The position numbers were made by a program, and so were the translations under genes. The notes under the pieces were generated by a model that saw nothing but the letters and a program-made list of their open reading frames with translations, had not been told where the DNA came from and ran no database searches. This document shows positions 2,481 to 57,809 of a stretch of 64,000 bases of DNA, in pieces. Within the stretch, counting starts at the first letter, position 1, and each line of letters starts with the position of its first letter. The stretch lies in the IMG/VR virus record IMGVR_UViG_3300050120_000152, positions 124,001 to 188,000 of that record; one strand, written 5' to 3'.

Positions 2481-2567
2481 GCGTCTTTGGGTGAGTGGCT
2501 GAAACCATCAGTTTTCCAAACTGAAACCTGCGAAAGTAGGTCAAGAGTTCGAATCTCTTAGGACGCT
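2481..2567 (+). tRNA. trnG: tRNA-Gly(TCC) with long variable arm
   Basis: GCGTCTT/AGGACGC, U73, TCAGT-TTTCCAA-ACTGA, variable hairpin CCTGC-GAAA-GTAGG. Confidence 0.85.
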
Positions 2568-2574
2568 CAAATAT

Positions 2575-2645
2575 GCGGGATTGGCATATTGGTTGTGTCT
2601 CAGATTTCCAATCTGATCAAAGGAGTTCGATTCTCCTATCCCGCT
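2575..2645 (+). tRNA. trnG: tRNA-Gly(TCC)
   Basis: GCGGGAT/ATCCCGC, TCAGA-TTTCCAA-TCTGA, AGGAG-TTCGATT-CTCCT; CCA not encoded. Confidence 0.9.
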
Positions 2646-2680
2646 CATATGATAAATAGTATAAGTAACGGAAACGGCTT

Positions 2681-5721: not shown

Positions 5722-5799
5722 TGCGAGTTATATTAACGGTAGATTGGATGGCTCATAACCATCATATGGATTAGGGTTCGAATCCCCCACTCGCCACCA
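5722..5799 (+). tRNA. trnM: tRNA-Met(CAT), initiator-like
   Basis: GATGG-CTCATAA-CCATC; U1:C72 mismatch; A73; CCA. Confidence 0.85.
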
Positions 5800-18568: not shown

Positions 18569-19059
18569 TTATCATATTATTAAAATATAAAAAGTTTGTA
18601 CACGGTTTTATATAAATTTATTAATTGCAAGTACATGATTATTAAAATATAAAAAAGGTTGACATAAAATATTTTCATGTTAGTATAAATACTCTAACAC
18701 GTTCTCCATATACCAGTATGCAAAAAAGAAAAGCGTTCTCACTTTCAATGAGAATTTGTGCCGGGGCAGGGCCGGTCTGGTATACCAATTAAGGTTTACA
18801 ACGCTTCAAGTCCAGCGTGCAGTGTCACGGGATTGAAGAAGGTCGAGGAACCAAGAATTTTGAGTCAAAGAGACTCTATTCATCACATCATAAACAATAA
18901 TGCGGCAATATCCTCTATTTGTAATCAGACTATGCGTTTCTCCTTGAATTGTGTTTCCAGCTGACCAAATACGGTATTCGGTATTGACTCTTACAGGAGT
19001 TTGAGTTAATATCGCTATGAAGTAGAACATACGGTTGGTTAAATCTACAAAAGTTAAGG

Positions 19060-19092
19060 CCAGTCTAAGGTTAAACTTAGACTGGCTTTTTT
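19060..19092 (+). terminator. intrinsic terminator
   Basis: GCCAGTCTAAG-GTTAAA-CTTAGACTGGC-T7. Confidence 0.85.
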
Positions 19093-19122
19093 TATTTACA
19101 CCACAAAAACTTAAAACTGAGG

Positions 19123-19725
19123 ATGAGAACGATGAGACAATACACCGCCGCAATCGTTGCAATCTGCTTACTAATAAGTAGTTGTAGCGCAGAAAAGATA
19201 AAACCCGTGTTGGAACCAATGATTCCAACTACTACAATAACAGTAGTGCAAGACTTACATATCGAGCCTGTAAAAATTCAGTCGATAAGAGTAGCAATAG
19301 CCACCCCACAGGATACCAATTGTTTGGCTAAGGTAATCTATTATGAAGCTAGAGGCGAACCTTTGGCTGGGCAGATTGGCGTAGGATATGTAGTCCTTAA
19401 TAGAACAAAAGACAGCTACTACCCTAATACTGTATGTGGCGTAGTCAAACAAATTACCATAATCAAGCATAAAAAATTCTGTCAGTTCTCATGGTATTGC
19501 AAAGGGGGCGATTCTAAATTGAATACTATCATTGATAACATAAGTTACGCTTTTTGTTATGTAACTGCTGAAGCTATATTAACGGGTATGGTTGACAACC
19601 CCATCGGTAATGCCGTATCATTCCACATACGCCAGATCAATACTGGTTGGGCCAATCATGGCATGAAACTTACGGCCACAATTGGAAATCATAAATTTTA
19701 TGAGAGAAAGCATTCTAATGGATAA
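19123..19725 (+). CDS. SleB-like cell wall hydrolase
   Basis: CLAKVIYYEARGE..V.YVVLNR, CQFSW, IGNHKFY. Confidence 0.9.
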   Translation: MRTMRQYTAAIVAICLLISSCSAEKIKPVLEPMIPTTTITVVQDLHIEPVKIQSIRVAIATPQDTNCLAKVIYYEARGEPLAGQIGVGYVVLNRTKDSYYPNTVCGVVKQITIIKHKKFCQFSWYCKGGDSKLNTIIDNISYAFCYVTAEAILTGMVDNPIGNAVSFHIRQINTGWANHGMKLTATIGNHKFYERKHSNG

Positions 19726-20893
19726 GTATCTGGTACTCGTTTCTAAAGCAAATTCTACTATCTCCAACGTAACCAAAACCTTTACGGATGAGGTTGCTTT
19801 GGGAAAATATATTGATCTTAAGACAAAGGCTGGTTTCGCTTGTCATCAGTTCAATTACGACAAGAGCTTCCATTTAGGAAGCCAATTAATTTCAACCAAT
19901 GTATCAAAGGACGCATGAACTATGTATTACAGTTTTCATAATAGCGGTACAGTGTATTTTTTTAAACCAGACAAAGATGCATATGATGTTCGTAGTGGAA
20001 CAAAGCAATCATCTTTAGTATTTCACAGCAAACTTGTGAATGAAGCAAACCGTTTAGATGTTTTTATTTGTGACAATTATGGTAATATAATTGTGAAAAG
20101 TAAACGGAATCCAACCCATGTTCCCATGGCCGAATGGAAACGATTAAAAGCGAGCAATAAAAAGAAATACGCATAAATAGTTCACCATATTTAATCGGAG
20201 AGTATTCATGCAACTCAGCAACTGTATTCTTAGTGAACTCGATATTGATTCAACTGAATTCTTTTTTGGAAAGCGTGTAAATCTTTACACAGAAGATGAT
20301 GAGAATCCATATGGAACAGTCACTCTCGATGATGGTCACTATCATTTAACCGTAGGTGATTTACCAGCGTTTGGTGATCCGATTAAAAAATGACTTATCC
20401 AGTACTACCCATTGGTAAGTTATTGAAAGTTAAGGAAGGTCGCTTCATAAGAATTGAAGCGATTCTTTCTGGGCCTATGGAAACGTTTTACCTTATTCGC
20501 TGGACAGATACTAATGAAATCTTTTGCGAATTTCCTGACAAAATTAACGAATTATTGAGATAATACTATGACTGTCGTAAACGTAAACCCACCAATTACT
20601 ACAACTGTTTCTAAAGTAAACAATACTTTAGAATTCATCTGGAAAGCCGCTATTATCATAATTTTATTGTTTGCTCTTGCAACCTTTTCTTGGTTGTCCA
20701 TTTTGAATCATCGCTGTGAGGCATTCTGGGGCGAACAGTGTACCATTGTTGCTGCACCAGCATCTATCAAACCTATGTTTGGTAAAAAATATTATGATGC
20801 ATACAATGAAATTATTCCGGCAGCAACTGCTGAAGCACCAGCAACACCATCCACTGTAAAATAATAAAAGCCCCTTCCGGGGCTTTCTTATTA

Positions 20894-20913
20894 CTTACGC
20901 ATGCGTTAGGACT
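20894..20913. repeat. dispersed 24-bp element CYTACGCAWGCGTTAGGACTTAAT (copies at 20894, 38426, 38482, 47767, 51005)
   Basis: Five near-identical copies read directly. Confidence 0.85.
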
Positions 20914-21407
20914 ATTATGCATCATGTATAACAGCTTTCATGCTCTTTTTAATATAAGACTTGGCTTGATGTAATGTCTTAACCGAACACGGCAACTGAT
21001 AGGTATTATGTGATGTGATAGCCATATAATAATTTCTTTTATAATGATGTTCAGTGTCATCATTTGGCATATCACTTTCCCTTCCATCTGTTGAATGAAT
21101 GGGAAGTTCTCGTTTACGCTTGATAAGATCAAATTGAACCATAAGTCCGTTGATTTTGCCAACCCAGTGTGCTTTTTGATGAGTATAAAAACTAGAATAT
21201 TGTTTCATAATTAATTCTTCCTTATTATGAATGTTATTCTATTCGTTAAAACATGATGATTTTGTGAATGTTAAATTAACATATTAAAAACATGTTAAAT
21301 TAACATTCAATGCATGAGTTGTGCCAAGACGCAAGTATGGCATCCTTGACGGAATTAAACAAACCTGTTATCACAAAAATAAATACCTATGATATAACGG
21401 AATCAAC

Positions 21408-21914
21408 ATGGCTACAGATGTTCAACAACAAGTCAACAACAAAATTAATGAGTGTCTAAAGCGCGGCCGACAACTATTCAAGGCCAAGGTCATCCTAGAT
21501 CACATCATTCCCTCAGACTCTTTTACGAAGTCTAGTGGTTCAGCAGGTTGGAACAAGCAGCTTGGATGGTATATTAAACTTTCAAAGAAAGATTTGACAC
21601 ACCATTTGGATTATATGTTGAATGAAATCATTCCCCATGAAGTTGCCCATGTCATCTGTATGTGGCTACACGTCAACCACATGCCCATGGGAGATGACGG
21701 GCATGGCGAGGCATGGACTAAGGTTGCGAAGGCTTTAGGAAGCTCTGGTGAGGCTAAGCCGTTGGCACCCCAATTCAAGCATTCTTATAAGACCAGTAAG
21801 GGGAATATGGTCAAGGTCAATGATGAGCAGCACGAGGATATGCAGAAGCGTTATAAACGCTATACAGCTAAGGATGGTGGAGTTATCACTGCCGCAGGCT
21901 ATCAAGGAAAATAA
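21408..21914 (+). CDS. SprT-like zinc metalloprotease
   Basis: IIPHEVAHV...HGEAW motif. Confidence 0.85.
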   Translation: MATDVQQQVNNKINECLKRGRQLFKAKVILDHIIPSDSFTKSSGSAGWNKQLGWYIKLSKKDLTHHLDYMLNEIIPHEVAHVICMWLHVNHMPMGDDGHGEAWTKVAKALGSSGEAKPLAPQFKHSYKTSKGNMVKVNDEQHEDMQKRYKRYTAKDGGVITAAGYQGK

Positions 21915-22265
21915 TAAAAGCCCCTTTCGGGGCTTTTATTTTACCAATCTTGTTCATCAGTACTTGAATGTTGGTTGGACAATTCATCCAACTCTTCTTC
22001 GCAATCGGCAATTTCGTTTTCAATATCACCAATTTTTTCTTCCAGAGCATCAATTTCTGTGCGAAATCCATCTGCCAATCCGAAATCATCATCGTATGAT
22101 AATGTATTATCTAAATCGTCTTGAACTTGCGCTAGTTGGTGACGCGCATTTAGCAATTCTTGTCCAAGCTTGGACAAATGTGCCGTAAGATTCATTACGT
22201 TACTCATGACTATCAATTTACCTGTATGTTGTTGGGTTGTGAGAGGCTATAAGTTAACAAATTAG

Positions 22266-23435
22266 TTACAGCCTGTCAAGACTTTTCTTCTTCATTACGA
22301 TTTTTAAATTTATATCTTCGAATACTTGTAATACAGCGTTTAACTGATCAGGTGATGCTATAAAACATTCAGTATACCCACCACTAAAACTAATACAAGA
22401 AGGTTTGGTATATTTGTTGACAATGTTTTGGAGTATATATTGTTCAACCAAAAACATATCATATAAAATTCCAGAAAAAATCTTAATAGGATTAATAATT
22501 AGTTGTCTATATTCTTTAGCTTTAAATCGTTTCTTTATGGTAGAAACAGTAACGCCAATTTTATAATAACTTTGATTGCCATCTATAATTTTTATTAAAT
22601 ACAAAATTGCTAATTTATTTTTAAGGTTTGGTTCTTCTAAGAATCTATTGATACAATAACCACCTTTACTTTTAGTATTAGCACATTTTTTACAACCACA
22701 TCCGGAAAGATGTGATGCTGCCTCTTGTTCGAAATCTCCATGGATGGGACACGTTATAATAACTTTACTACAACTATTTACGTATATGGATTTATTATAA
22801 TTATAAAAATTATTATGCTTAGTACATGCTTTTGTTATAAAATCATCTGTTGTATATAAACAATTCCCATAACATTTAGAACAACCATAGCCTTGTAAAT
22901 GGGAACCAGCATTTTGCTCAAATTTTCCATGATCTGGACATATAATGTTAACTTTATCTCTGTAAGAAGTATAGTATGAACTACTATAATCATATTTAAA
23001 ATTATGAATAGCATTCGCTTCTATGATAAATTGATCAGTAACTTTTTTAAAATTGCCGGCACAAATTCGGCACTGTTTGCCTTGGAGATGATCACTTGCA
23101 GTTTGTAAAAACTCTCCATGAATTGGGCATATTATGATACTCTTAACATGATTATTTACATATATGAATTTATCATAATTATAAAAATTATTATGGGTTT
23201 TTGTAGCTTCTTTAACAAATTGTCCCGAAGTTTTCTTTATTTTACCCGAACATGATGGGCAACCTATACCATAAATATGATGAGCGGCACGTTGCGAAAA
23301 TTCACCATGTATAGGACATATTACTATAATTTTTGTTGTAGAATTTACATATTTAACTTTACTGTAATCATACTTGTCATTATGTTTATGATTGCATCGT
23401 AGAATAAATTCATTAGTTGTTGTTTTCTTTGTCAT
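22266..23435 (-). CDS. homing-endonuclease-like protein: four CPxHG zinc-ribbon repeats plus T5orf172/GIY-YIG-like C-terminus
   Basis: Repeat Y..V.Y..IICP.HG.F.Q...H..G..C..C; C-terminal LYLIK..YKIGVT. Confidence 0.75.
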   Translation of the reverse strand: MTKKTTTNEFILRCNHKHNDKYDYSKVKYVNSTTKIIVICPIHGEFSQRAAHHIYGIGCPSCSGKIKKTSGQFVKEATKTHNNFYNYDKFIYVNNHVKSIIICPIHGEFLQTASDHLQGKQCRICAGNFKKVTDQFIIEANAIHNFKYDYSSSYYTSYRDKVNIICPDHGKFEQNAGSHLQGYGCSKCYGNCLYTTDDFITKACTKHNNFYNYNKSIYVNSCSKVIITCPIHGDFEQEAASHLSGCGCKKCANTKSKGGYCINRFLEEPNLKNKLAILYLIKIIDGNQSYYKIGVTVSTIKKRFKAKEYRQLIINPIKIFSGILYDMFLVEQYILQNIVNKYTKPSCISFSGGYTECFIASPDQLNAVLQVFEDINLKIVMKKKSLDRL

Positions 23436-24957
23436 TACAATATAATTATTTTATTTACAATTATGTAACCGTTCGTCCGAAACTATTAAGAGTAAAATAC
23501 TAATAGCTAACCAAAAAATACTAGCAACTATTTTCCATTTACCTTTCTTATGCTCTTTGTAGGAGTGCCAGAATGTCCATGCACCACCAAGAGAAGCGAC
23601 AAGATGATAACCAAAATGGATGACTAACAATATGCTAAATAAAATTTGCATTACATTTCCATTGGTTTGGCTTGCACATCATTAACCATCAACTCATATT
23701 TCACACATTCAGCTTCTATTTTACGAACTTTCCTGTAATTAAACCAGATAAATCCCAAGAATATTAGTGCATCTAGTTTAATATCTAAATCATCTGGATT
23801 TTGAAACCAATAGATTACCACAGCAGCTAATGCCCAACATACCACGTAATGATAAAAGCTTCTATAATGTTCTAACAACGATTCTAATCTTGTAATATTA
23901 ATTTTCATTTAATTTCCTAAAATTTAACATAAAAATTAGGGAGCATTATGCTCCCTAATTTTTTTACTTCTTCTTTTTCTTCGGCTCTGGCGGCATATCA
24001 GGATCGCGCTTCTTACGCTTCTCAATCTTGATACCATTCTTGAACTTGTGAAACGCTTCACCGTTCAGCAAATCTCGCCACACGGTACGTTCAGCTGCAG
24101 TAACCGCAGTGCGTAAATAATGGCGCACAATCTTGATCGACAGCGGGTATTCGTATGCAGTACGTACTTCTAAATCTCGTGCCATTGTAGTATTCCTAAT
24201 TGTTGTGAGTAAAGGTATATGTTATTTGCTATTGTATTATATGTCAAGTGTTAATTAGCATTTAATGTTTTAGATAATTTAATAATCAGTATATCAGGTA
24301 AACATTTGAAAGCTATCATCTTCCCAGCGTACACCACAGCGAGAAAGATCAATAAGGTAAGTTTCATCAACATGCTTTGCCATTTCTACAATATCTACAC
24401 TGAAATAAATGCAATCATGTTCACTTGCAGCTAGTATACTACCCTTGGAATACGGTTGCAACATCAACATGGCATTGATAGTGGCATCAGTGTTTAAGGG
24501 ATTTTCAATATGTTCAAATTGTAGGAAAATATCAGAATTATCAAAAAATTCTTCCAATTTTCCTGTAATCATATCCCGAATATCGTATTTGTCATGTTCA
24601 GAAGTAATGTTAAGTGATTCATAGATAGTCTTGTTCATAAAATTCTCTAGTTAAAATAATCGCCCTTGTCGATATAAACACGGATATCATTGTTACCATC
24701 TTTAATAATGCCGTCTAGCAGAATAATATAAGCATTGCCAGATTGTAAAACAGGATTGATACCCCATCTGCCAATGTTTAATGATAGAACTTTACTAAAA
24801 AATGCATCAGAAAACTCAAGTCTTGGAATACCGTTTTTATCTCGTAATGTCATAAACATAATTATTATCCAAATTTCCAATAAGATTTATGATAACCGCA
24901 AACTTTACATGTTTGTGATAAAGAATGTTTTACGCCAGCAATTTTAAAAAATGTACT

Positions 24958-26109
24958 TCAGTCCGTTGAAGCACATTCGTCTGAAATGTTAAAATCTTTA
25001 TAATGCTTAATAAGCCAAGCTTTGTCATCAAATGGTTTACCAGTATAGTAACTCATAGCTACATTGAACATCATAGGTTCTAGTTCATCTTTAGCCTTCA
25101 AAGCAAATTCTTTGCGCGATAATAAGGAATTATCATGAAAAAATTTAATAGGTGCGTCAAGCTTTTTATATAATTTTCTAACAATTAATTCCATTTCATC
25201 AATACGATTAAGTAAATATATATCATGACTAAAATGAGCCCTTACATCATCACTTAATTCATTAACCACGCACTCAAATAAGTTACGTGGATGAGTTACA
25301 TTGTCTTTCAGTGAATGTAGATTTTTGTACCAGTCACATTTTACTTTAATGTTCATACCATCAACATTGATAACATATCCTTCAATATCTTTCATATTTG
25401 GAATATTGTCTACGAATTCGATCAATTTAACTGGATCAATATCATAAAAATGGTCTTTCACCAAATGCTGAACACAACCAAATTCCTCCATGTCAGATTG
25501 TAACATACTATATGGATAATCCATACCATTCGTCAAATCTCGTGCCGAAAAAATGGTTAAATTGGTTTTTTGATACGGTAAAACAATTCTAAATTTTGCA
25601 TCAGTAAATTCCATACTTACAGAATATCCCTTATGCATCATGTACATGAGGAAATTATGCAACGTTGAGTTTTCTTCCAGCTGAAGAAATTCATTTGCAG
25701 CAATAGCTTGGTCGGATTGTAATGCAGTCTTAGACTTCAAATAAACCATGTCAGCAATAGGAAGTTTATAAGTAGTCATAATACTACCATCCATCTTGTC
25801 CATGATAGATCGAGTCTTGCTGAAATCCAAATTCATTGCCATTTGATTTTCGTTCAAATTAAAAAATTTGCGAGGGGTAAGTGCTGCCAACGATTCATAC
25901 TTATCATCTTTAGTAATGAAAGTAATTCCACGGCATTCCAAAGCCGATGGCTTCAAAAAATCAGTATAGGATGCAAGACGATAAGTGAACACACGGAATT
26001 GAGTACCGTTGAACAGATGGTCAACATAATAAAATGGGCTTTCGTCAGATTCGCATAATGCCATCAAATCTTGATAAAGATCACGGCCATATTGAGTTTG
26101 AACAGTCAT
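24958..26109 (-). CDS. rnlA: T4 Rnl1-like RNA ligase
   Basis: ECRG, KFFNLNE, motif I KMDGS, EGYV, KVKCDWY. Confidence 0.92.
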   Translation of the reverse strand: MTVQTQYGRDLYQDLMALCESDESPFYYVDHLFNGTQFRVFTYRLASYTDFLKPSALECRGITFITKDDKYESLAALTPRKFFNLNENQMAMNLDFSKTRSIMDKMDGSIMTTYKLPIADMVYLKSKTALQSDQAIAANEFLQLEENSTLHNFLMYMMHKGYSVSMEFTDAKFRIVLPYQKTNLTIFSARDLTNGMDYPYSMLQSDMEEFGCVQHLVKDHFYDIDPVKLIEFVDNIPNMKDIEGYVINVDGMNIKVKCDWYKNLHSLKDNVTHPRNLFECVVNELSDDVRAHFSHDIYLLNRIDEMELIVRKLYKKLDAPIKFFHDNSLLSRKEFALKAKDELEPMMFNVAMSYYTGKPFDDKAWLIKHYKDFNISDECASTD

Positions 26110-26650
26110 TGCAATTTCCGATTGTATTAGGGTAAATGAGTTTTTCGTTTTCTATTATAGCATGCTCATGTAACTTATTGTCAAGTGTCTTGGTAGGACT
26201 GATGATATGGGTTACTTTCCATTTATGAATAGCTTCCATATAATCTGATACAATACCACGATGGCATGACCATGGCACGGCTTCGCTACACATATAGGCT
26301 ACTTTATTATCAGTAGCATAACTTTTTAATAATTCGATAGCATGTGCGAATGCTGGATCGTGATAGGCATAATCGGCATAATTACGGAATGCCGGTAATC
26401 GCCATGCTGCATTGTTTCCTGTAGACTTGGGATGTTTCTTACGAAATCCACCAAGTTCTGGCATATGAATGTAGTCAATACCCATCAAAGGTAAAGTATA
26501 TTCAAAATAATCTTTATTAAAATGTGGGAATTTTTTGGAACTTGGAAATGTACGCACGTCAACTAGCATATCAATACGATATGCACTCAACATCTTAACA
26601 AAGGTTCTAAAATCTTTATCAGAGTGGCCTATGGAAAAAATTTCTGGCAT
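26081..26650 (-). CDS. DUF488 family protein
   Basis: IFSIGHS, LVDVRTFPSSK.FPHFN, LGG.R, MCSE..W.CHR. Confidence 0.88.
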   Translation of the reverse strand: MPEIFSIGHSDKDFRTFVKMLSAYRIDMLVDVRTFPSSKKFPHFNKDYFEYTLPLMGIDYIHMPELGGFRKKHPKSTGNNAAWRLPAFRNYADYAYHDPAFAHAIELLKSYATDNKVAYMCSEAVPWSCHRGIVSDYMEAIHKWKVTHIISPTKTLDNKLHEHAIIENEKLIYPNTIGNCNDCSNSIWP

Positions 26651-27355
26651 GATTAATTTTGTGCAGAGTTATCTACACTATTGGCGAACCATGAAGTAAT
26701 AAAATCTTGTAATGGATTACCAAAATTGTGACTTTCATCGGTCAAGCTGAAAGTATACGATGTAGGATCAAGGCGAGCATAATGTTCCATAATGGTTCTG
26801 CAATGCTTTAAACGCTTTTCTAAGCGTTCTACCATAATTTGTGGAGTATTACCGTTACGTAAGGTACGAAAAATCTTTGCGTGCTGTTTCTGAATATAAG
26901 GAAGCATGTAAACAATCATAATTGAAAAGCACCTTTAATGAGTAAATATAGCGGGCCAATAAAACAAATAGCAAATATTGAGCCAATAAATGCTAATAAC
27001 ACATATGTTATTATCCTAAGCTGTTTATCTTCCATCATACACCTAATCATCTCAGGGTATTTATTTCTTCTGGCCGAGCTTTTCCCAAGAATGTTCCATG
27101 ATAAACGAATAATCGTGTTCAGTAATCTTGGATTCGTATTTGAAAATTTTGAATTTCCAGATCATAACCCTAACACGCTTGGAAAGCGTATAAATCTGAA
27201 AATAAGGTTCGTCAACCCATGAACCATTGTAGTGAGTATGGATGTTAAGAATTTTGAATTTCTTAATTTTCTTGACTGAGCTAGTGTTATGGATTTTCAT
27301 GGTGCCATTATACAATACGTTTCAATAAAAGAAAAGCCCCTTTCGGGGCTTTTGA

Positions 27356-27961
27356 TTAGAACATGTTGCAGATACATAACGCAGATGCACCAGCGTAAGT
27401 CAATGAAGTTAATGCCAGTACACCATAGTTACCATCTTCAAAATCTTCTAGACTTTTGTAAGTAGTGTTGAGGGCTTTTTTGCGCTGCCATAAACCGAAC
27501 AGCACCGGAGTAATCGTGTATTCTACTTTGTAGTCAAAAACTCGCCTAACAATCCAAACGTAAAGCTTTGTAAAAACCAGCCAGATCAATCCCAAACAAA
27601 TGAACTGAATGATAGCTCCACCAAACATCTTGGCAACGATAATGGATACCGTAATGATACCCGCTGGACTTTTAATAAAATCATTTGCAGCAACATTAAG
27701 TTGCTTGGCGGTTTCACCAATTGCCAGACCAATACCTTCACCAATTGCCTTTACTTTATCAGTGAACACAGCACTGGCCGTGATTTCACCAGCTTTGTTA
27801 CATTGATCTTGTAACTTATTGGTCTGATCTTGGGTAAGATTAAGCGTCTTAGCAGCCTGTCCCACATCAGCACAATAATTAGGTGAAGCAGATGGTGAAG
27901 TCTGACCGAATGCCAGCGTAGATACCATCATGAGCAACATAAACACAAACATCTTTTTCAT
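27356..27961 (-). CDS. hypothetical membrane protein
   Basis: Signal peptide, Cys pair, C-terminal TM helices. Confidence 0.7.
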   Translation of the reverse strand: MKKMFVFMLLMMVSTLAFGQTSPSASPNYCADVGQAAKTLNLTQDQTNKLQDQCNKAGEITASAVFTDKVKAIGEGIGLAIGETAKQLNVAANDFIKSPAGIITVSIIVAKMFGGAIIQFICLGLIWLVFTKLYVWIVRRVFDYKVEYTITPVLFGLWQRKKALNTTYKSLEDFEDGNYGVLALTSLTYAGASALCICNMF

Positions 27962-28450
27962 TGTTAATCCTTAAAAATAAAGGGTCGGCCAATCCAACCC
28001 TTTGAATAGCGCCGCCAGAAGAACAGCATCGGGTAATTACTCCTTTGTTTGTATCTTCTGACTTCGGCTAATTTTCATAATACTGAGGAATCGAACCTCC
28101 CTTCCCGCTCCATATGCTGGCGTGCTTCCTATACACTTGGGTATTACTACTGTTTTCACCGCATTAATTCAATTTATTTTCGCGTGCTGCCAAACCTTGA
28201 GTATACAAAATATACTCTAAAACTGCGCTTCGTGCAACACTTTTAGCATCTGTATAAAATCCATTCTCTGCAATGAAGGCACCGGCTATTTTCTTAGCAT
28301 CTTCAATTTGCTCTGGCGTAGCCAGTGTAAGTTTATTTTTGTACACCATTAGTATTATCCTTCAAAACGGGCAGACAGTAAGCATAGAATCAGAATTGCA
28401 AATAATTTTTTCATAATTTCATTATAACATGTAATGGATTAAAGTCAATT

Positions 28451-28540
28451 TGGCGGGAGTAGTGGGAGTCGAACCCACGACGTTTAACATTAAATGCATG
28501 GATTTAGAATCCACCGCTCTGACCACTGAGCTATACTCCC
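28451..28540 (-). tRNA. amber suppressor tRNA (anticodon CTA)
   Basis: GGGAGTA/TACTCCC-G-CCA; GTGGA-TTCTAAA-TCCAT; 19-nt variable region; canonical D and T arms. Confidence 0.88.
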
Positions 28541-28801
28541 GTATTTTATTATTTAGACTTTTGCAATGCGCCTACGTTCATCAGCAAGAGTATCAATAAA
28601 ACCATTATAAAACTCTTCTGAGGTATCTTCGGGGCCATCAGCATCAAGCTTACCGCCTGTTGCGATCCACCATTTACCCAATGCACATCCACGCTCATAA
28701 GGTGGCTTATTGCTATTGATATCGCCCATACGATTTTTTCCCTGATAAGTGGATGCTGAAAATATTACCAGTTCGCCACGCCTAAGTCCATTCATTTCTA
28801 T

Positions 28802-29143
28802 TCACCATAAATCTTCAGAATATAGGGCTGGGCCATGTTGTAATTTTTGAATTTGTCCACATTGGATAGCAATTATACCAGCTTCTACACGATTAACATA
28901 GCGTCCTGTACTTGTAAGAAAACCTTGTTCCACCTGTTCGAAATTATTAGGTGTTGGTACGTCAGTGAGTTTATCATATCGACCAACCATCCACCAAATG
29001 ACATGATGGTGCCTCGCAGGCGATGACATATAATGAATTTTTCCATCAATATCTTTAATAGCAGCAGCTACAATGGTTTCTGTCGATTTACCAATAAATG
29101 GATCAATTCTGGGGGAAGGTTCATTAGGTTTTGACCAAAGCAT
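28802..29143 (-). CDS. hypothetical phage protein
   Basis: IVAAAIK..RHHH..QGFLTSTGRYVNR..LYSEDLW. Confidence 0.7.
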   Translation of the reverse strand: MLWSKPNEPSPRIDPFIGKSTETIVAAAIKDIDGKIHYMSSPARHHHVIWWMVGRYDKLTDVPTPNNFEQVEQGFLTSTGRYVNRVEAGIIAIQCGQIQKLQHGPALYSEDLW

Positions 29144-29145
29144 AA

Positions 29146-29496
29146 TTATATCTTCAACATTTCGGCTACGGATTCAAGCGTATCAGCAAGAATAATAGAA
29201 TATTCACGATGATCCGCCACAAGTTGTTTTTGGGATTCATAAATGCTCAATGACATATTAGTGAATCCAATGTGATGTTTATATAGCGTGTAGGTAGAGC
29301 CACTTTGAGTTTTCAGATGATAACATTTATCATCTTCAGTATAATCTACGATATCAGATGATAGACGCCAGCTATCACCACCAAGATAACTACCATGCCA
29401 ACCAGACAAAATTTTGGCAACAGTATCAATACCGTTTGATATGGTGAGCAACACCCATTTATCGGGCGATTGACCGTCTTGCGCCTGTAAATCCAT
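29146..29496 (-). CDS. hypothetical phage protein
   Basis: PDKWV..GWHGSYLGGDSWRLSS. Confidence 0.7.
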   Translation of the reverse strand: MDLQAQDGQSPDKWVLLTISNGIDTVAKILSGWHGSYLGGDSWRLSSDIVDYTEDDKCYHLKTQSGSTYTLYKHHIGFTNMSLSIYESQKQLVADHREYSIILADTLESVAEMLKI

Positions 29497-31886
29497 ACAA
29501 TTATCCTCTAAATTCCATTATACGCCGAAATAGATTAAAGTCAATTGACCGTAGGTTTCTTGGCATAGCCATGTTCAGCCATTTCAGCCAACATTTCCTT
29601 ACCATACATAGCTTCAAAAATTTGTGTGGTAACCTGATGAACCAATGGCATATAATATTTACGCTCATTACAATGATTAAGAAAACGATCTAACGTTACC
29701 TCATCGTCCAACATATGAGCATTCTCTTCTATAAATTTAACAATGTCTTTTACAACAAGGTCAATTTCAGTTGCTGTCATATGTTCAGGTGTTTGAAGAT
29801 CAAATTGAACATCAAAAATGGTGTTTTCCATATTATAGAATATCTTCAAAAGGTTGATTTGTAATGGGATCAATATATAGTCCATTAATTCTTGGAATTA
29901 TCTCATCCAATGTAATATTGAGCCAATATTGTTTTAATTTTTTAGGACAATAAGCATCAGCGGCCCAAATATTAAATTTTCTTACGTAACGCATCATGCG
30001 AATATCAATAAGTTCTACTGGAATTAATCCAAGATAAAAAGGATTAATTCTAATTAATTCTAAGGCGTCATTGTAATTCATATAATAGTCTTATAAAATA
30101 ATACCGAATTAAATCGTTCGTTGGGAAATTCGGTCAAATATACATTGGTATGTGATTGCCCCACGTCCGTATGGTTTACAGTATAAATCTGACCAATATT
30201 TAAATACGTATTACCATGAACTCTATCACTATCATATCCATTAAAGCCGCCATAAACAACTTCCGTTCCTTCTTTAGCATAAATATTCATGCATTCTAGC
30301 ATTTTATAATCTTCTTGCTCAGTAGGGAAAAGCATATTAATCTCCTTAATTATTGATGTAACAAATGATGATTTTTAATTTTGGTTTGATCATATTTTTC
30401 AATAACCCATTTTGGGTGATTGATCTTAAATCCATCTTCGCCTAGTAACATAATCAAGCGTAATTTATGGTCAGAATCCATAAGATACATGGATGTTGGA
30501 TTCATGCCACCAATATCAAACAAATTCAATGGGAATTTAATTGGCCCAATGATCAAATTGTCATTATCTACCGTAATGGTTTTGAAAATTTCACCATCTA
30601 CGCTAACCGATTTTGCGGTTTTGATATGATCCAAGACTTGATTAGTTGAAATATGTGTTGCCATGATATTAATTTCCGTTTCTTTTATTTATCGTCACGT
30701 TGTTCTACGGAATATCAATCAATGGATATTTCTTAATGTCGATAAACATAAGTTTATCAATTTGTTTTGCATAATCCACATAAACTTCTGTAGCGGAAAA
30801 TGGCAATTCTACATAGAATTGATCGAAATGTCTACCACCGAGACGAACGTAGCCACCAGAATCAACATTAGAATCACCGTCGATGTAGCAACCCGTGCTT
30901 TCTACCATAGGTTCAGTCTCAGTCGCTGCAGTGCCATTATCATAGCACTTACAGCAGTTCCAATCATGTCTAGCACGACTGATAATAACCGATTTACACA
31001 GCTGGCAGCGAATGGCGAGATACTTGGTCATGGTTTATTACCCCTAAATAAAGATTTCCAAAAAGATGGTTTATTAGATTTTTGCGATTTAGGTTCGTAA
31101 TCTGCCTTCAAACAGGAGCCAGCATAATTAAATTCCAGCCGCATTAGAGATATTGTATAATTAAATAATTCAAATTCATGATTTAAATATTTTTCAAAAT
31201 ATTCCAAATTTTCATCTACAAAATTATTCGAAATGAGCGATGCGCTGTCAAACAAATCATTAGTTTTCAATGAAAAATAAAGTTCGCCCGCATTTAATGG
31301 AGTTTTAGCAACTAATAATAAATGTTCAGAAAATTGTTTTCTCAGCAATGAACAAACACGTTCTTTATTAGATAAATCAATATCATTCAATAATTCTTTC
31401 TTTTGCTTGAATAATTCATTAGCGTCAATATAATCATTCATAATTATTATCCAATTTTATTCCATTGACCTGTGACGTGATAATACATTTCTTTTAATGC
31501 TGTTTTCCATTGAGTTTTCAACGTTGAAATAGGCCCAAAAGTAACACCTACAGCAGCGCTTCCCATATTAGTTTTTGGTGAGCAAATATTCTTAATTTTA
31601 AAGCCATATGGCTTCATCTGTTTATTCATCAAAGATTTGATACGCAATAATAGTGGATAAGTGTAAAAATCTGCCGTTTTTACATTATTGGTACGCAAGT
31701 TAAGCACCCGAAATTCCATATGAGTCGGATTAACATCACTGGAATCTTCGGCAGTAATCACATAATTGATTCTCGCCAATACAGATGCAGTCATAATCTC
31801 ACTGATGGCACGACTGTCATTATCATAGGCATTTTTTTCTGCTAATTTAATTGCCTTCAATTTATTTGAATATTCAAGCACATTGT

Positions 31887-32393
31887 TCATATAAAATCTC
31901 GTTTAATTATCGTCCAAGGATCAACCAGTTCTAAACTGTTATTATGTACATCAGTACGATGCATTACAATATTGGGAACCGTATCATCAAATAGTATCAC
32001 TTTTGTATCAGGTTCGTCAAATTTATGCAGCCATAATTCTTCTGCCATATGTCGTTTTTTAACAAAATCGAAAAAATCAGATTGTGTAAGAAATGGCATT
32101 TTAAACCATTCGCGAGCCATGACTATACAATCTTCCAACGTAAAAATTAGTTCATCATCAAATTTAAAATGATGAGTTAGTTCTATATCATTGCGGATGC
32201 CATTTTCATTAAATTCTTTTAAATCTTTGGGATTCCATACAGCCCATGATAATAAACCCACACGAGTATTATTACCCAGTTGTGACATTACCCATTCTTT
32301 CAAGATTGGAAAACGAGAACACATCAGCCGAGAATTGGTTTCCCAATCCCAGATGATGGTGTTTTCTAAATCTAATAAAAGTATAGTGTTCAT
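31887..32393 (-). CDS. HAD-like phosphatase (variant motif I)
   Basis: ILLLDLENT at N-terminus and LFDDT near C-terminus. Confidence 0.45.
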   Translation of the reverse strand: MNTILLLDLENTIIWDWETNSRLMCSRFPILKEWVMSQLGNNTRVGLLSWAVWNPKDLKEFNENGIRNDIELTHHFKFDDELIFTLEDCIVMAREWFKMPFLTQSDFFDFVKKRHMAEELWLHKFDEPDTKVILFDDTVPNIVMHRTDVHNNSLELVDPWTIIKRDFI

Positions 32394-33360
32394 AGTAATG
32401 CAATTATATCACATCAACATGAATAAACCATAAATGCTATTTAATTATTCACAATTAACTGTATAATCAACATGAACAATAAGGTTAATAAATTCTGATC
32501 GCTTGACTTTGGTAAAATTATAACCCAAATTATTGAAGTTGGAGCTTAATACATTTAATACTTCTAAATCAAATAATTTATCATCTCGTAATTTTTCTAA
32601 AGCAGTTCTGTCATCACCAAAATCAACATCATACATACTCCAAAAACCCAATGTGCCTGCAGCATTGGCGCAGCTACGCAAATGATCTTTAAACCCTTCA
32701 ACCACGGCAATTAAATAGTTTATTTTAATTAGCTGTTGCTTCGATTCTATCTGCTTAATAGCACGACTATTTTCAGCACAAATATGTTGTGCTGAAAAAT
32801 TTTCAGATTCTATCTTTTTATTTTTAGTAAAAAACCCATAATTATTCCCTAAATCCGTATCATTATCAATTAATTCTTTTACATAGGCTAATGCGGCTGA
32901 ATTACCGTAAACATCGCCATACGGTGTCGCAACATGGTGTTCATACATCATTTCCTGAAGATCATTGATATGATCCATGATCATCCACGAAGCTGGTGAT
33001 TCTTTTGGATAATATTTTTGACGAGCATTCCATTTTGACATTATACCATCAAAAGGGGTGGGTAAAATATCCATAGCAACTTTGCTAAAGTCAACAATGT
33101 TCTTTGATGATGTATGATCTACTTTATTATTCATAATTTTTATTCTTTTCACTTTTTATTCTTTTCTACAACAGCCGAAAGTTCCATTAGAGCTTTTTGT
33201 TTTGCATATGAAGCGGGTACTGTTACCTTAACCTTTACAGGTTGCTGAACCTTTTTTGTGATAATTTTTCCTAATAATTTCATATCATCACCTATATTAT
33301 TCCTAATACATGTTTCAATGAATTATATGTTATATACCATTAATAGATGCTTAACATATT

Positions 33361-35849: not shown

Positions 35850-36305
35850 TTAAAATCCTTCTACCTGTTCCTCGATAATGTCTGCGATCTGTGCAAACGA
35901 ATAATTCATATTATCATTTAATTCTGTAGCATCATAGATACGACCATCCACAAGGAAGGAAGCCCCACAGCGAAAAGGACTATTATGGAATGAGATATTA
36001 TGACTTTCATTCCATTCACCCGATGGAAGCAATGCACTCTCCATCCCACCGGCTTTATATTCTACACGACCATCACAAACCATCTGTAACACACCAAGGC
36101 AACAATATTGCTTGATCAATGTATCATTCTTATACGTAACATGTTCCAACTTACCTTTACCCTGCTCATACGTGGGTTCCCACGATGTTACTCCATCACG
36201 AGTAACATCCTCACCAGAACGCAATGCTGCCACCCATAAGTCTTTAATCTCTTTAGGCATTTTGGTGTTAGGTGGAAGTGTATCAGGGTAATAAGGTATT
36301 GACAT
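35850..36305 (-). CDS. WxxALRSG-family protein
   Basis: WVAALRSGE plus insertion, YCCLGVLQ. Confidence 0.8.
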   Translation of the reverse strand: MSIPYYPDTLPPNTKMPKEIKDLWVAALRSGEDVTRDGVTSWEPTYEQGKGKLEHVTYKNDTLIKQYCCLGVLQMVCDGRVEYKAGGMESALLPSGEWNESHNISFHNSPFRCGASFLVDGRIYDATELNDNMNYSFAQIADIIEEQVEGF

Positions 36306-41788: not shown

Positions 41789-41863
41789 GGGGAAGTACCT
41801 CAGAGACTAGAGGACTGGCATATGAGCCAGAAGTCGTAGGTTCAATCCCTACCTTCCCCACCA
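41789..41863 (+). ncRNA. tRNA with a 6-nt anticodon loop (AUAUGA)
   Basis: Perfect cloverleaf GGGGAAG/CTTCCCC-A-CCA, but CTGGC-ATATGA-GCCAG. Confidence 0.75.
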
Positions 41864-57703: not shown

Positions 57704-57809
57704 GGGTCGGTAGCTCAGTTGGTAGAGCAGGAGACTTATTCAAGTATCTTCAATGAGGATACTTCTATTAATCTCTTGGTCGCGGGTTCGAACCCCGCCC
57801 GACCCACCA
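57704..57809 (+). tRNA. trnK: tRNA-Lys(TTT) split by a 30-nt insert (57738-57767)
   Basis: Body resembles enterobacterial tRNA-Lys; removing the insert gives 76 nt with loop CTTTTAA. Confidence 0.88.

What the first reader, a model, noticed from the sequence alone, without database searches (positions are those of the whole stretch)
28451..28540. Isolated amber suppressor tRNA(CUA) with G73 and a long variable region
It is a clean cloverleaf reading UAG, located outside the tRNA clusters among minus-strand genes. G73 plus a long variable region suggests Ser identity (inference). Genes in this window are not TAG-interrupted, so any recoding or readthrough would concern genes elsewhere (for example late or lysis genes, as in stop-codon-recoding phages).
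Basis: partly seen in the sequence, partly recalled or inferred. Interest (0 to 1): 0.68.

Follow-up and report, generated by a model that had tools for sequence, protein, structure and literature searches.

The report
Jumbo-phage amber suppressor tRNA, lineage-conserved
This is a real, intact tRNA gene that reads the UAG stop codon, but it belongs to a kind already described in XacN1-like giant phages, which use the normal genetic code; its long variable loop is a 14-base insertion seen only in this phage, not a serine-type arm.

Summary
Window 28451-28540 (- strand) holds a clean 90-nt tRNA with anticodon CUA, G73, encoded CCA and a 19-nt variable region. An independent peat metagenome run shows the same sequence.

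The window comes from a complete 340-kb uncultured jumbo phage related to Xanthomonas phage XacN1. tRNA(CUA) genes are conserved in this lineage: I found 15 in 12 genomes or contigs. The XacN1 and RsoM2USA papers already reported theirs as suppressor tRNAs with unknown targets.

The closest complete relative (G003) carries two tandem CUA tRNAs at the same syntenic place and strand. The window's gene is the orthologue of the first. It differs by compensatory stem changes, by G73 instead of A73, and by a 14-nt AU-rich insertion in the variable loop.

That insertion does not fold into a helix (0 kcal/mol, against -8 to -11 for the phage's own tRNA-Ser arms), and the D arm is class I. The Ser inference is therefore weak; Gln or Lys is more plausible.

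The whole genome reads in code 11. No gene is TAG-interrupted, TAG ends about 5% of genes, and readthrough would add at most 28 residues. No release factor gene was found, and none of the three synthetase families searched.

Most likely it is a host-charged amber suppressor. Its biological target remains unknown.

The parts
28451..28540 (-). tRNA(CUA) gene, 90 nt, with encoded CCA
   Evidence: ARAGORN; Rfam RF00005 at 66 bits; cloverleaf is the MFE fold; identical sequence in the independent run X2
28505..28507 (-). Anticodon CUA (tRNA positions 34-36), inside the loop UUCUAAA
   Evidence: Sequence. The loop YUCUAAA is shared by all 15 CUA tRNAs of related phages
28479..28497 (-). Variable region, 19 nt, AU-rich and unstructured
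   Evidence: ARAGORN parse; folds to 0.0 kcal/mol on its own; no pair probability above 0.35
28483..28496 (-). 14-nt insertion (CATTTAATGTTAAA) relative to the G003 orthologue. It lies between positions 44/45 and 46, so G46-U47-C48 are kept
   Evidence: Pairwise alignment A1 with G003; unique in the genome; absent from the 14 other CUA tRNAs
28454..28454 (-). Discriminator base G73 (A73 in the G003 orthologue)
   Evidence: Sequence; comparison table
29517..29544 (-). Sigma-70-like promoter (TTGACT, 16 nt, TATAAT; 11 of 12) that could drive three small ORFs and then the tRNA
   Evidence: Consensus scan. A consensus match only: the number of sites in the region equals the shuffle expectation
28553..29496 (-). 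Three small ORFs (116, 113 and 80 aa) directly upstream on the same strand. The last one ends 12 nt before the tRNA
   Evidence: ORF lists. Only the 113-aa ORF matches a PHROG, of unknown function
28421..28448 (-). Second sigma-70-like promoter (11 of 12, with TG extension), starting 3 nt after the tRNA 3' end. There is no terminator between them
   Evidence: Consensus scan
24958..26109 (-). T4 Rnl1-type RNA ligase, 2.3 kb downstream on the same strand. This neighbourhood is conserved
   Evidence: Pfam PF09511 and PF20819; PHROG 562; a CUA tRNA lies upstream of the ligase homologue in G003, L195, L219, L238 and L243

Best explanation
This is a functional amber-suppressor tRNA gene of the kind conserved in XacN1-like jumbo phages, which use the standard genetic code. 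It is the positional orthologue of the first of two tandem CUA tRNAs in the nearest complete relative.

Proposed mechanism (all steps inferred; only the gene structure, its conservation and the stop-codon counts rest on tool results):
1. It is transcribed with a block of small - strand genes.
2. It is matured by host RNase P and 3' trimming; the CCA end is encoded.
3. It is charged by a host aminoacyl-tRNA synthetase. The phage carries none of the three synthetase families I searched (Glu/Gln, class IIb including Ser, Lys/Asp/Asn).
4. It competes with release factor 1 at UAG and gives partial readthrough during infection.

The phage itself is little exposed. About 5% of its genes end in TAG, and readthrough would add at most 28 residues.

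The long variable loop is a 14-nt insertion at the one place where the tRNA fold tolerates extra bases. It is not a class II arm.

The inserted residue is more likely Gln or Lys than Ser. This rests on established E. coli results, recalled rather than read here: GlnRS and LysRS read U35 and readily charge CUA tRNAs, and G73 favours GlnRS.

What the readthrough is for is unknown. The target could be host genes, or termination in general.
For: Gene integrity.

Orthology and synteny with G003: flanking genes are collinear. Alignment A1 shows the same acceptor stem, with a compensatory change at pair 5-68 and two more at 28-42 and 30-40.

Conservation of the kind:
- XacN1 has 2 CUA tRNAs (present twice because of its terminal repeats); Xoo-sp13, RAS14 and RsoM2USA have 1 each.
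- G003 has 2, G006 has 2 and G010 has 1.
- L195, L219, L238 and L243 have 1 each.
- All 15 have the loop YUCUAAA. 14 of 15 have fully paired acceptor stems of very different sequence, which points to selection on structure.

Published as suppressor tRNAs: PMC5852040 for XacN1 and PMC8504454 for RsoM2USA.

Standard code.

Stop use: TAA 304, TGA 134, TAG 25. Extensions after TAG have a median of 7 and a maximum of 28 codons.

No RF-1 domain and no Glu/Gln, class IIb or Lys/Asp/Asn synthetase domain in the genome.

The sequence is reproduced in a second sample.
Against: - There is no expression, aminoacylation or suppression data. No RNA run holds the locus.
- This is the only one of 15 CUA tRNAs with an insertion, and the tandem partner seen in G003 and XacN1 is missing. 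That could equally mark the start of decay.
- A floppy 19-nt variable loop may lower charging or ribosome performance.
- The promoter calls are consensus matches at chance frequency.
- The amino-acid assignment rests on E. coli identity rules, and the host is unknown (peat metagenome).
- The short-extension pattern after TAG is not significant (0 of 25 against 61 of 438 with 30 or more codons; Fisher p = 0.06).
- G1-C72 is not ideal for GlnRS.
Confidence: 0.6

Rival explanations
1. It is a decaying or crippled copy. The 14-nt insertion and the loss of the tandem partner show that suppression is being lost in this phage, and the gene is no longer a working tRNA.
For: It is the only one of 15 lineage CUA tRNAs with an enlarged variable loop. 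The second copy found in G003 and XacN1 is absent, and no remnant is detectable. The insertion has no stable structure.
Against: Every stem is perfectly paired. The conserved residues U8, A14, G18-G19, the TTCGA loop and G46-U47-C48 are kept, and so is the encoded CCA. Three compensatory pair changes relative to G003 point to continued selection on structure. Its Rfam score is the highest in the window. The variable loop is the site where extra bases are tolerated. This phage has many other tRNAs with enlarged variable loops.
Confidence: 0.17
2. One reading: G73 together with the long variable region makes it a seryl-tRNA synthetase substrate, so that UAG is read as Ser.
For: G73, G1-C72, G2-C71 and C11-G24 are compatible with bacterial Ser identity (sequence; identity rules from my own knowledge). 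The insertion sits exactly where class II extra arms sit. SerRS ignores the anticodon.
Against: The variable region folds to 0.0 kcal/mol, against -8.2 to -11.3 for the phage's four tRNA-Ser arms. The D arm is class I and matches the class I orthologues. The orthologue G003_a has a 5-nt loop and A73. Long variable regions in this genome are not restricted to Ser, Leu or Tyr.
Confidence: 0.1
3. It is a code-switch helper, as in stop-codon-recoded phages: some genes of this phage, for example late or lysis genes, contain in-frame TAG and need this tRNA.
For: A CUA tRNA is the hallmark of TAG-recoded phages (bioRxiv 10.1101/2021.08.26.457843). TAG is this phage's rarest stop.
Against: Stop-to-stop ORF coverage is 0.858 under code 11 and 0.884 with TAG as sense. 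That gain is smaller than with TGA (0.92) or TAA (0.97) as sense. No 5-kb window stands out. No pair of substantial ORFs is joined by a TAG. None of 808 alignments to relatives shows a real in-frame TAG. TAG stops are not conserved in orthologues: 1 of 18. No RF-1 domain gene. The XacN1 authors found the same negative result.
Confidence: 0.03
4. The 14-nt insert is removed after transcription, like a mini-intron. This would restore a 76-nt class I suppressor like that of G003.
For: The same genome has a Lys-like tRNA gene with an insert of about 30 nt in the anticodon loop, which could not decode unless the insert is removed. An Rnl1-type RNA ligase lies 2.3 kb downstream in a conserved neighbourhood.
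Against: No known bacterial or phage mechanism excises a 14-nt segment from a variable loop. The two inserts share no motif (by eye). Variable-loop insertions need not be removed for the tRNA to work.
Confidence: 0.05

Closest known systems
Suppressor tRNA(CUA) genes of Xanthomonas phage XacN1 (Yoshikawa et al. 2018, PMC5852040) and Ralstonia phage RsoM2USA (PMC8504454)
   Same: Same phage lineage (major capsid protein 67% and 48% identical). Anticodon loop YUCUAAA, class I D arm and T arm, and encoded CCA. The genome uses the standard code, TAG stops are rare, and in-silico readthrough reveals no target.
   Different: In those phages the genes lie inside the tRNA clusters and have 5- to 7-nt variable loops. 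Here the gene is isolated on the opposite strand and carries a 14-nt insertion. XacN1 has a tandem A73/G73 pair; here there is a single G73 gene.
Tandem tRNA(CUA) pair of the uncultured relative IMGVR_UViG_3300048854_000081 (G003, 350 kb)
   Same: Same syntenic position and strand, upstream of the Rnl1 ligase. The first copy has the same acceptor stem apart from one compensatory pair, and the same T arm apart from one loop base.
   Different: G003_a is 77 nt with a 5-nt variable loop and A73. G003 also has a second copy with G73, which is missing in the window.
Suppressor tRNAs of TAG-recoded (code 15) phages such as crAss-like and Lak phages (bioRxiv 10.1101/2021.08.26.457843; PMC9523058)
   Same: A phage-encoded CUA tRNA, presumably charged by host synthetases, with Gln as the usual outcome.
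   Different: Those phages have in-frame TAG in many genes, low code-11 coding density, and often a release factor 2 gene. None of this is seen here.
Class II tRNAs (Ser, Leu, bacterial Tyr)
   Same: Extra bases at the same site, between positions 45 and 46. G73 as in tRNA-Ser.
   Different: No stable helical arm, a class I D arm, and class I orthologues.
tRNA(CUA) annotated 'tRNA-Pyl' in T4-like Acinetobacter phages (for example vB_AbaM_Konradin, MN648195.1)
   Same: A CUA tRNA in a T4-related phage. It shows that such genes are scattered among phages. I did not test the genetic code of that phage.
   Different: No close sequence relationship. It is 75 nt with a short variable loop and A73.

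Membership tests
Amber suppressor tRNA(CUA) of XacN1-like jumbo phages | Complete tRNA cloverleaf with anticodon CUA in a 7-nt loop | tested here: met
   ARAGORN and Rfam at 66 bits; all stems paired; loop UUCUAAA
Amber suppressor tRNA(CUA) of XacN1-like jumbo phages | The host genome belongs to the XacN1-like lineage | tested here: met
   Gp23-type major capsid protein 64-67% identical to XacN1, Xoo-sp13, CM1 and RAS14, and 48% to RsoM2USA; 340-kb genome with terminal repeats, 39 tRNAs and a permuted tmRNA
Amber suppressor tRNA(CUA) of XacN1-like jumbo phages | Orthology with CUA tRNAs of relatives | tested here: met
   Syntenic position and strand in G003, with the acceptor stem and T arm shared. 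For the XacN1 and Xoo-sp13 genes the evidence is only D- and T-arm similarity, in a different genomic location
Amber suppressor tRNA(CUA) of XacN1-like jumbo phages | The genome is read in the standard code | tested here: met
Amber suppressor tRNA(CUA) of XacN1-like jumbo phages | Actual suppression of UAG | not testable with these tools
   No RNA run holds the locus. As far as the papers read here show, suppression has not been demonstrated for the published members either
Class II / seryl-type tRNA | Stable helical extra arm | tested here: not met
   0.0 kcal/mol on its own, against -8.2 to -11.3 for the phage's tRNA-Ser arms; pair probabilities at most 0.35
Class II / seryl-type tRNA | Discriminator G73 | tested here: met
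   Sequence. G73 is shared with Gln, Trp, Asn, Asp and Glu tRNAs, so it is not specific
Class II / seryl-type tRNA | Class II D arm and descent from class II tRNAs | tested here: not met
   The D arm GCUC/GAGC with loop AGUGGUCA matches the class I orthologues. The closest sense-tRNA body is tRNA-Lys, weakly
Suppressor tRNA of a stop-codon-recoded (code 15) phage | In-frame TAG in phage genes, and low coding density under code 11 | tested here: not met
   Coverage about 0.86-0.89 under code 11; TAG as sense gains less than the controls; no genuine in-frame TAG in 808 alignments
Suppressor tRNA of a stop-codon-recoded (code 15) phage | Phage-encoded release factor (frequent but not obligatory) | tested here: not met
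   No PF00472 match, while the control genomes gave matches
tRNA-Pyl (the ARAGORN label) | 3-nt variable loop, 6-bp anticodon stem, and a reduced D loop without G18-G19 | tested here: not met
   19-nt variable region, 5-bp anticodon stem, and a canonical D loop with GG. ARAGORN assigns this label from the anticodon alone. A pylS gene was not searched for

The most novel reading that the evidence does not exclude
XacN1-like jumbo phages may keep amber-suppressor tRNAs, often as an A73/G73 pair and in one subclade at a fixed site upstream of an Rnl1 RNA ligase, as a weapon against host translation termination rather than to decode their own genes. The phages themselves are TAG-poor and carry their own permuted tmRNA to clear the resulting read-through ribosomes. 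In this phage one gene would have replaced the pair by shifting its discriminator to G73 and gaining a variable-loop insertion that changes which host synthetase charges it.
Probability: 0.12. Interest if true: 0.65.

Novelty: new member of a known kind. Interest (0 to 1): 0.3.

Why it matters
Phage suppressor tRNAs are usually discussed as tools for stop-codon recoding. This lineage keeps them across deep divergence (capsid identity down to 48%) while using the standard code, and nobody knows their target.

This instance adds three things:
- A second genomic setting for these genes: isolated, upstream of Rnl1, and conserved in several uncultured jumbo phages.
- A natural discriminator difference (G73 here, A73 in the orthologue).
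- A natural class I tRNA with a 14-nt variable-loop insertion. It could be used to test how such insertions affect charging and suppression.

It does not reveal a new genetic code or a new class of RNA.

Tried and rejected
- Close homologues of the tRNA. BLAST against 50,697 phage records gave only half-length matches to unrelated Trp and Ile tRNAs. Exact-pattern scans of IMG/VR returned only unrelated tRNAs (Ile-UAU, Asn, Ile-GAU), nothing, or G003 alone. Two scans of metagenome contigs found nothing.
- A paralogue inside the genome. None of the other 38 tRNAs is a clear source.
- The anticodon arm matches tRNA-Trp(CCA) of Kosakonia phage 305 except for C35U. I judged this non-specific, because Asn and Ile tRNAs share the same stem and the true orthologue has a different stem.
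- The search for related loci with the 201-aa neighbour, and with the ligase alone, gave nothing. A three-sequence ligase alignment did work.
- My first pattern search for CUA tRNAs in relatives used a gap that was too long and missed the positive control. I repeated it with a corrected gap.
- An apparent in-frame TAG in a conserved ORF at genome 65,506 was the antisense frame of a - strand gene.
- The idea that the promoter after the tRNA is a remnant of the lost second copy was not supported (local alignment p = 0.58).
- The insert is not a repeated element; it occurs once in the genome.
- The fragments G001, G002, G004 and G005 do not cover the syntenic region, so they say nothing.

Full report
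**Observation**

ARAGORN finds 14 tRNA genes in the window. Thirteen are on the + strand. One is on the - strand at 28451-28540, with anticodon CTA. Rfam's tRNA model scores it 66 bits, the highest in the window, and the cloverleaf is the minimum-free-energy fold.

Read on the - strand, the gene has:
- a 7-bp acceptor stem;
- a canonical class I D arm;
- a 5-bp anticodon stem with the loop UUCUAAA;
- a 19-nt variable region;
- a standard T arm;
- G73 and an encoded CCA.

The probable source run covers it at a depth of about 159. A contig from a different sample and study spans the whole gene with no difference. The anticodon is therefore not an assembly error. All four runs that hold the locus are peat metagenomes.

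**Genome context**

The window is bases 124,001-188,000 of a 340,344-bp IMG/VR virus record with direct terminal repeats. CheckV rates it 100% complete, and its G+C content is 34.7%.

It has a T4-type Gp23 capsid protein. This is 64-67% identical to those of Xanthomonas phages XacN1 and Xoo-sp13 and Stenotrophomonas phages CM1 and RAS14, and 48% identical to that of Ralstonia phage RsoM2USA. The genome carries 39 tRNA genes and a permuted tmRNA. ARAGORN calls no tRNA-Tyr or tRNA-Asn.

**Is TAG recoded anywhere?**

I found no sign of it.
- Stop-to-stop ORFs of at least 300 nt cover 0.858 of the genome under code 11 and 0.884 with TAG as sense. The same relaxation gives 0.92 for TGA and 0.97 for TAA, so TAG gains least.
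- No 5-kb window gains more from TAG than from the TGA control on average.
- No two substantial ORFs are joined by a TAG.
- Of 808 tblastn alignments between relatives' ORFs and this genome, none has a genuine internal TAG. The one candidate was the antisense frame of a conserved - strand gene.
- Among about 463 ORF-defined genes the stops are TAA 304, TGA 134 and TAG 25. Readthrough of a TAG would add a median of 7 and at most 28 residues.
- TAG stops are not conserved in orthologues: 1 of 18 comparisons.
- No release-factor domain was found, and no Glu/Gln, class IIb or Lys/Asp/Asn synthetase domain.

**The kind is conserved and already published**

I fetched the four isolate genomes and scanned them. 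XacN1 has two tandem CUA tRNAs, present twice because of its terminal repeats. Xoo-sp13, RAS14 and RsoM2USA have one each.

The XacN1 paper describes 'two suppressor tRNA genes' with anticodon CUA. It reports that in-silico readthrough of XacN1's 18 amber stops revealed nothing (PMC5852040). The RsoM2USA paper reports its one CUA suppressor (PMC8504454).

Among uncultured relatives, G003 (350 kb, capsid 92% identical) has two tandem copies, G006 (363 kb) has two, and G010 has one. Loci anchored on the Rnl1 RNA ligase show a CUA tRNA 3-4 kb upstream of the ligase, on the same strand, in four further jumbo-phage contigs.

Across all 15 genes:
- the anticodon loop is YUCUAAA in every one;
- 14 have fully paired acceptor stems of widely different sequence, which is the signature of selection on a working tRNA;
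- the discriminator is A in nine, G in five and U in one.

**Orthology and the insertion**

The 20 kb around the G003 pair are collinear with window coordinates about 19,000-32,400, and the tRNAs lie at the same place and on the same strand.

Alignment A1 shows that the window's gene is the orthologue of the first G003 copy. The acceptor stem is the same except for a compensatory G-C/A-U change at pair 5-68. Two more compensatory changes lie in the anticodon stem. The T arm differs by one loop base. The discriminator is G instead of A.

The window's gene also has a clean 14-nt insertion between the 5' end of the variable loop and G46-U47-C48. The second G003 copy has no counterpart in the window and has left no detectable remnant. 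The insert occurs only once in the genome.

**Why Ser is unlikely**

- The 19-nt variable region alone folds to 0.0 kcal/mol, and no pair probability exceeds 0.35. The variable arms of the phage's four tRNA-Ser genes fold to between -8.2 and -11.3 kcal/mol.
- The D arm is class I and matches the class I orthologues.
- This phage has enlarged variable regions in many tRNAs that are normally class I: Gly(UCC) 18 nt with a stable stem, Arg(UCU) 22, Met 14 and 10, Thr 11-16, Trp 10, Arg(ACG) 10, Ala 8 and Lys 8. Length therefore does not mark identity in this genome.

From established E. coli work, which I recall rather than read here, GlnRS and LysRS read U35 and readily charge CUA tRNAs, and G73 favours GlnRS. 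The recoding literature likewise argues that host GlnRS is intrinsically prone to charge phage CUA tRNAs (bioRxiv 10.1101/2021.08.26.457843). The closest sense-tRNA body is tRNA-Lys, but only weakly.

My rough odds are Gln 35-40%, Lys 20%, Ser 10-15% and Trp 10%, with the rest other or uncharged.

**Mechanism**

Shown:
- an intact gene with anticodon CUA;
- its orthologue in the nearest complete relative, and the same kind of gene across the lineage, with compensatory evolution;
- standard code use throughout the genome;
- few TAG stops, with short extensions after them;
- no release factor gene and none of the three synthetase families searched.

Inferred:
- transcription from the sigma-70-like promoter at 29544-29517, through three small ORFs, into the tRNA. 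This promoter is a consensus match only;
- host processing and charging;
- competition with RF1, giving partial UAG readthrough.

The biological purpose is unknown. It could be host-directed disturbance of termination, perhaps buffered by the phage's own tmRNA, but that is speculation.

**Rivals**

- Decay of the gene (0.17).
- Ser-type suppressor (0.10).
- Excision of the insert after transcription (0.05).
- Helper for recoded genes (0.03).

**Verdict**

The finding is real but ordinary for its lineage. It is a new member of a published kind, with an unusual variable-loop insertion and a different genomic setting. Interest is 0.3.

Noticed in passing
window 2481-2568 and 2575-2646 (+): Two adjacent tRNA-Gly(UCC) genes. 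The first is 88 nt with an 18-nt variable region that forms a stable 6-bp arm (-8.0 kcal/mol), a class II-like arm on a Gly tRNA. The second is a normal 72-nt gene.
   Followed up: partly
whole genome G000; in the window for example 5722-5799: Many tRNAs that are normally class I have enlarged variable regions, mostly AU-rich and unstructured: Arg(UCU) 22 nt, Met 14 and 10, Thr 11-16, Trp 10, Arg(ACG) 10, Ala 8, Lys 8. This looks like a genome-wide tendency, and I have no explanation for it.
   Followed up: partly
window 57704-57806 (+): Rfam aligns a tRNA (62 bits) whose body resembles the tRNA-Lys of relatives but which has an insert of about 30-33 nt in the anticodon loop. Removing 30 nt would give the loop CUUUUAA, that is Lys(UUU). 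ARAGORN misreads it as a 94-nt Ile(AAU). It may be a mini-intron or a disrupted gene.
   Followed up: partly
genome 89,806-90,109 (L187 807-1110, +), outside the window: Permuted (two-piece) tmRNA, RF04321 at 88.9 bits. ARAGORN also calls tmRNAs in XacN1 and RsoM2USA. A suppressor tRNA and a tmRNA together in one phage lineage may be functionally linked.
   Followed up: partly
L175 1421-1577 (G003); XacN1 36047-36205: The tandem CUA tRNA pairs consist of one A73 and one G73 gene. In XacN1 the two share an identical D arm, anticodon arm and T arm and differ only in the acceptor stem and discriminator. This suggests two suppressors charged by different synthetases.
   Followed up: partly
L195 1855-1930, L219 3493-3565, L238 2068-2143, L243 2020-2096: In four more distant jumbo-phage contigs (ligase 36-38% identical) a CUA tRNA lies 3-4 kb upstream of the Rnl1-type RNA ligase on the same strand, as in the window and in G003. 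The neighbourhood is conserved.
   Followed up: partly
XacN1, Xoo-sp13, RAS14, L219 CUA tRNAs: Several lineage CUA tRNAs have non-Watson-Crick pairs at 27-43 and 31-39, which leaves only 3-4 paired positions in the anticodon stem. The window's gene has 5 of 5.
   Followed up: no
RAS14 record 302428-302502 (-): ARAGORN calls a tRNA with anticodon UUA (ochre). Its T loop is atypical, so it may be a false call or a degenerate gene.
   Followed up: no
window 41789-41863 (+): A tRNA (Rfam 54 bits) whose anticodon ARAGORN cannot assign. The anticodon loop has an unusual length.
   Followed up: no
genome 245,922-246,407 (-), outside the window: A 161-aa ORF ends at TAG, while its orthologues in XacN1, Xoo-sp13 and RAS14 run about 128 codons further. 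After the TAG only 3 codons are open in frame, but another frame stays open for about 60 codons. This may be a frameshift or a split gene. TAG suppression would not rescue it.
   Followed up: partly
window 22266-23435 (-), 24958-26109 (-), 26081-26650 (-): An HNH/T5orf172-type endonuclease, a T4 Rnl1-type RNA ligase and a DUF488 protein lie downstream of the tRNA on the same strand.
   Followed up: no
whole genome G000: ARAGORN finds no tRNA-Tyr and no tRNA-Asn in this phage, whereas XacN1, Xoo-sp13, RAS14 and RsoM2USA have both.
   Followed up: no
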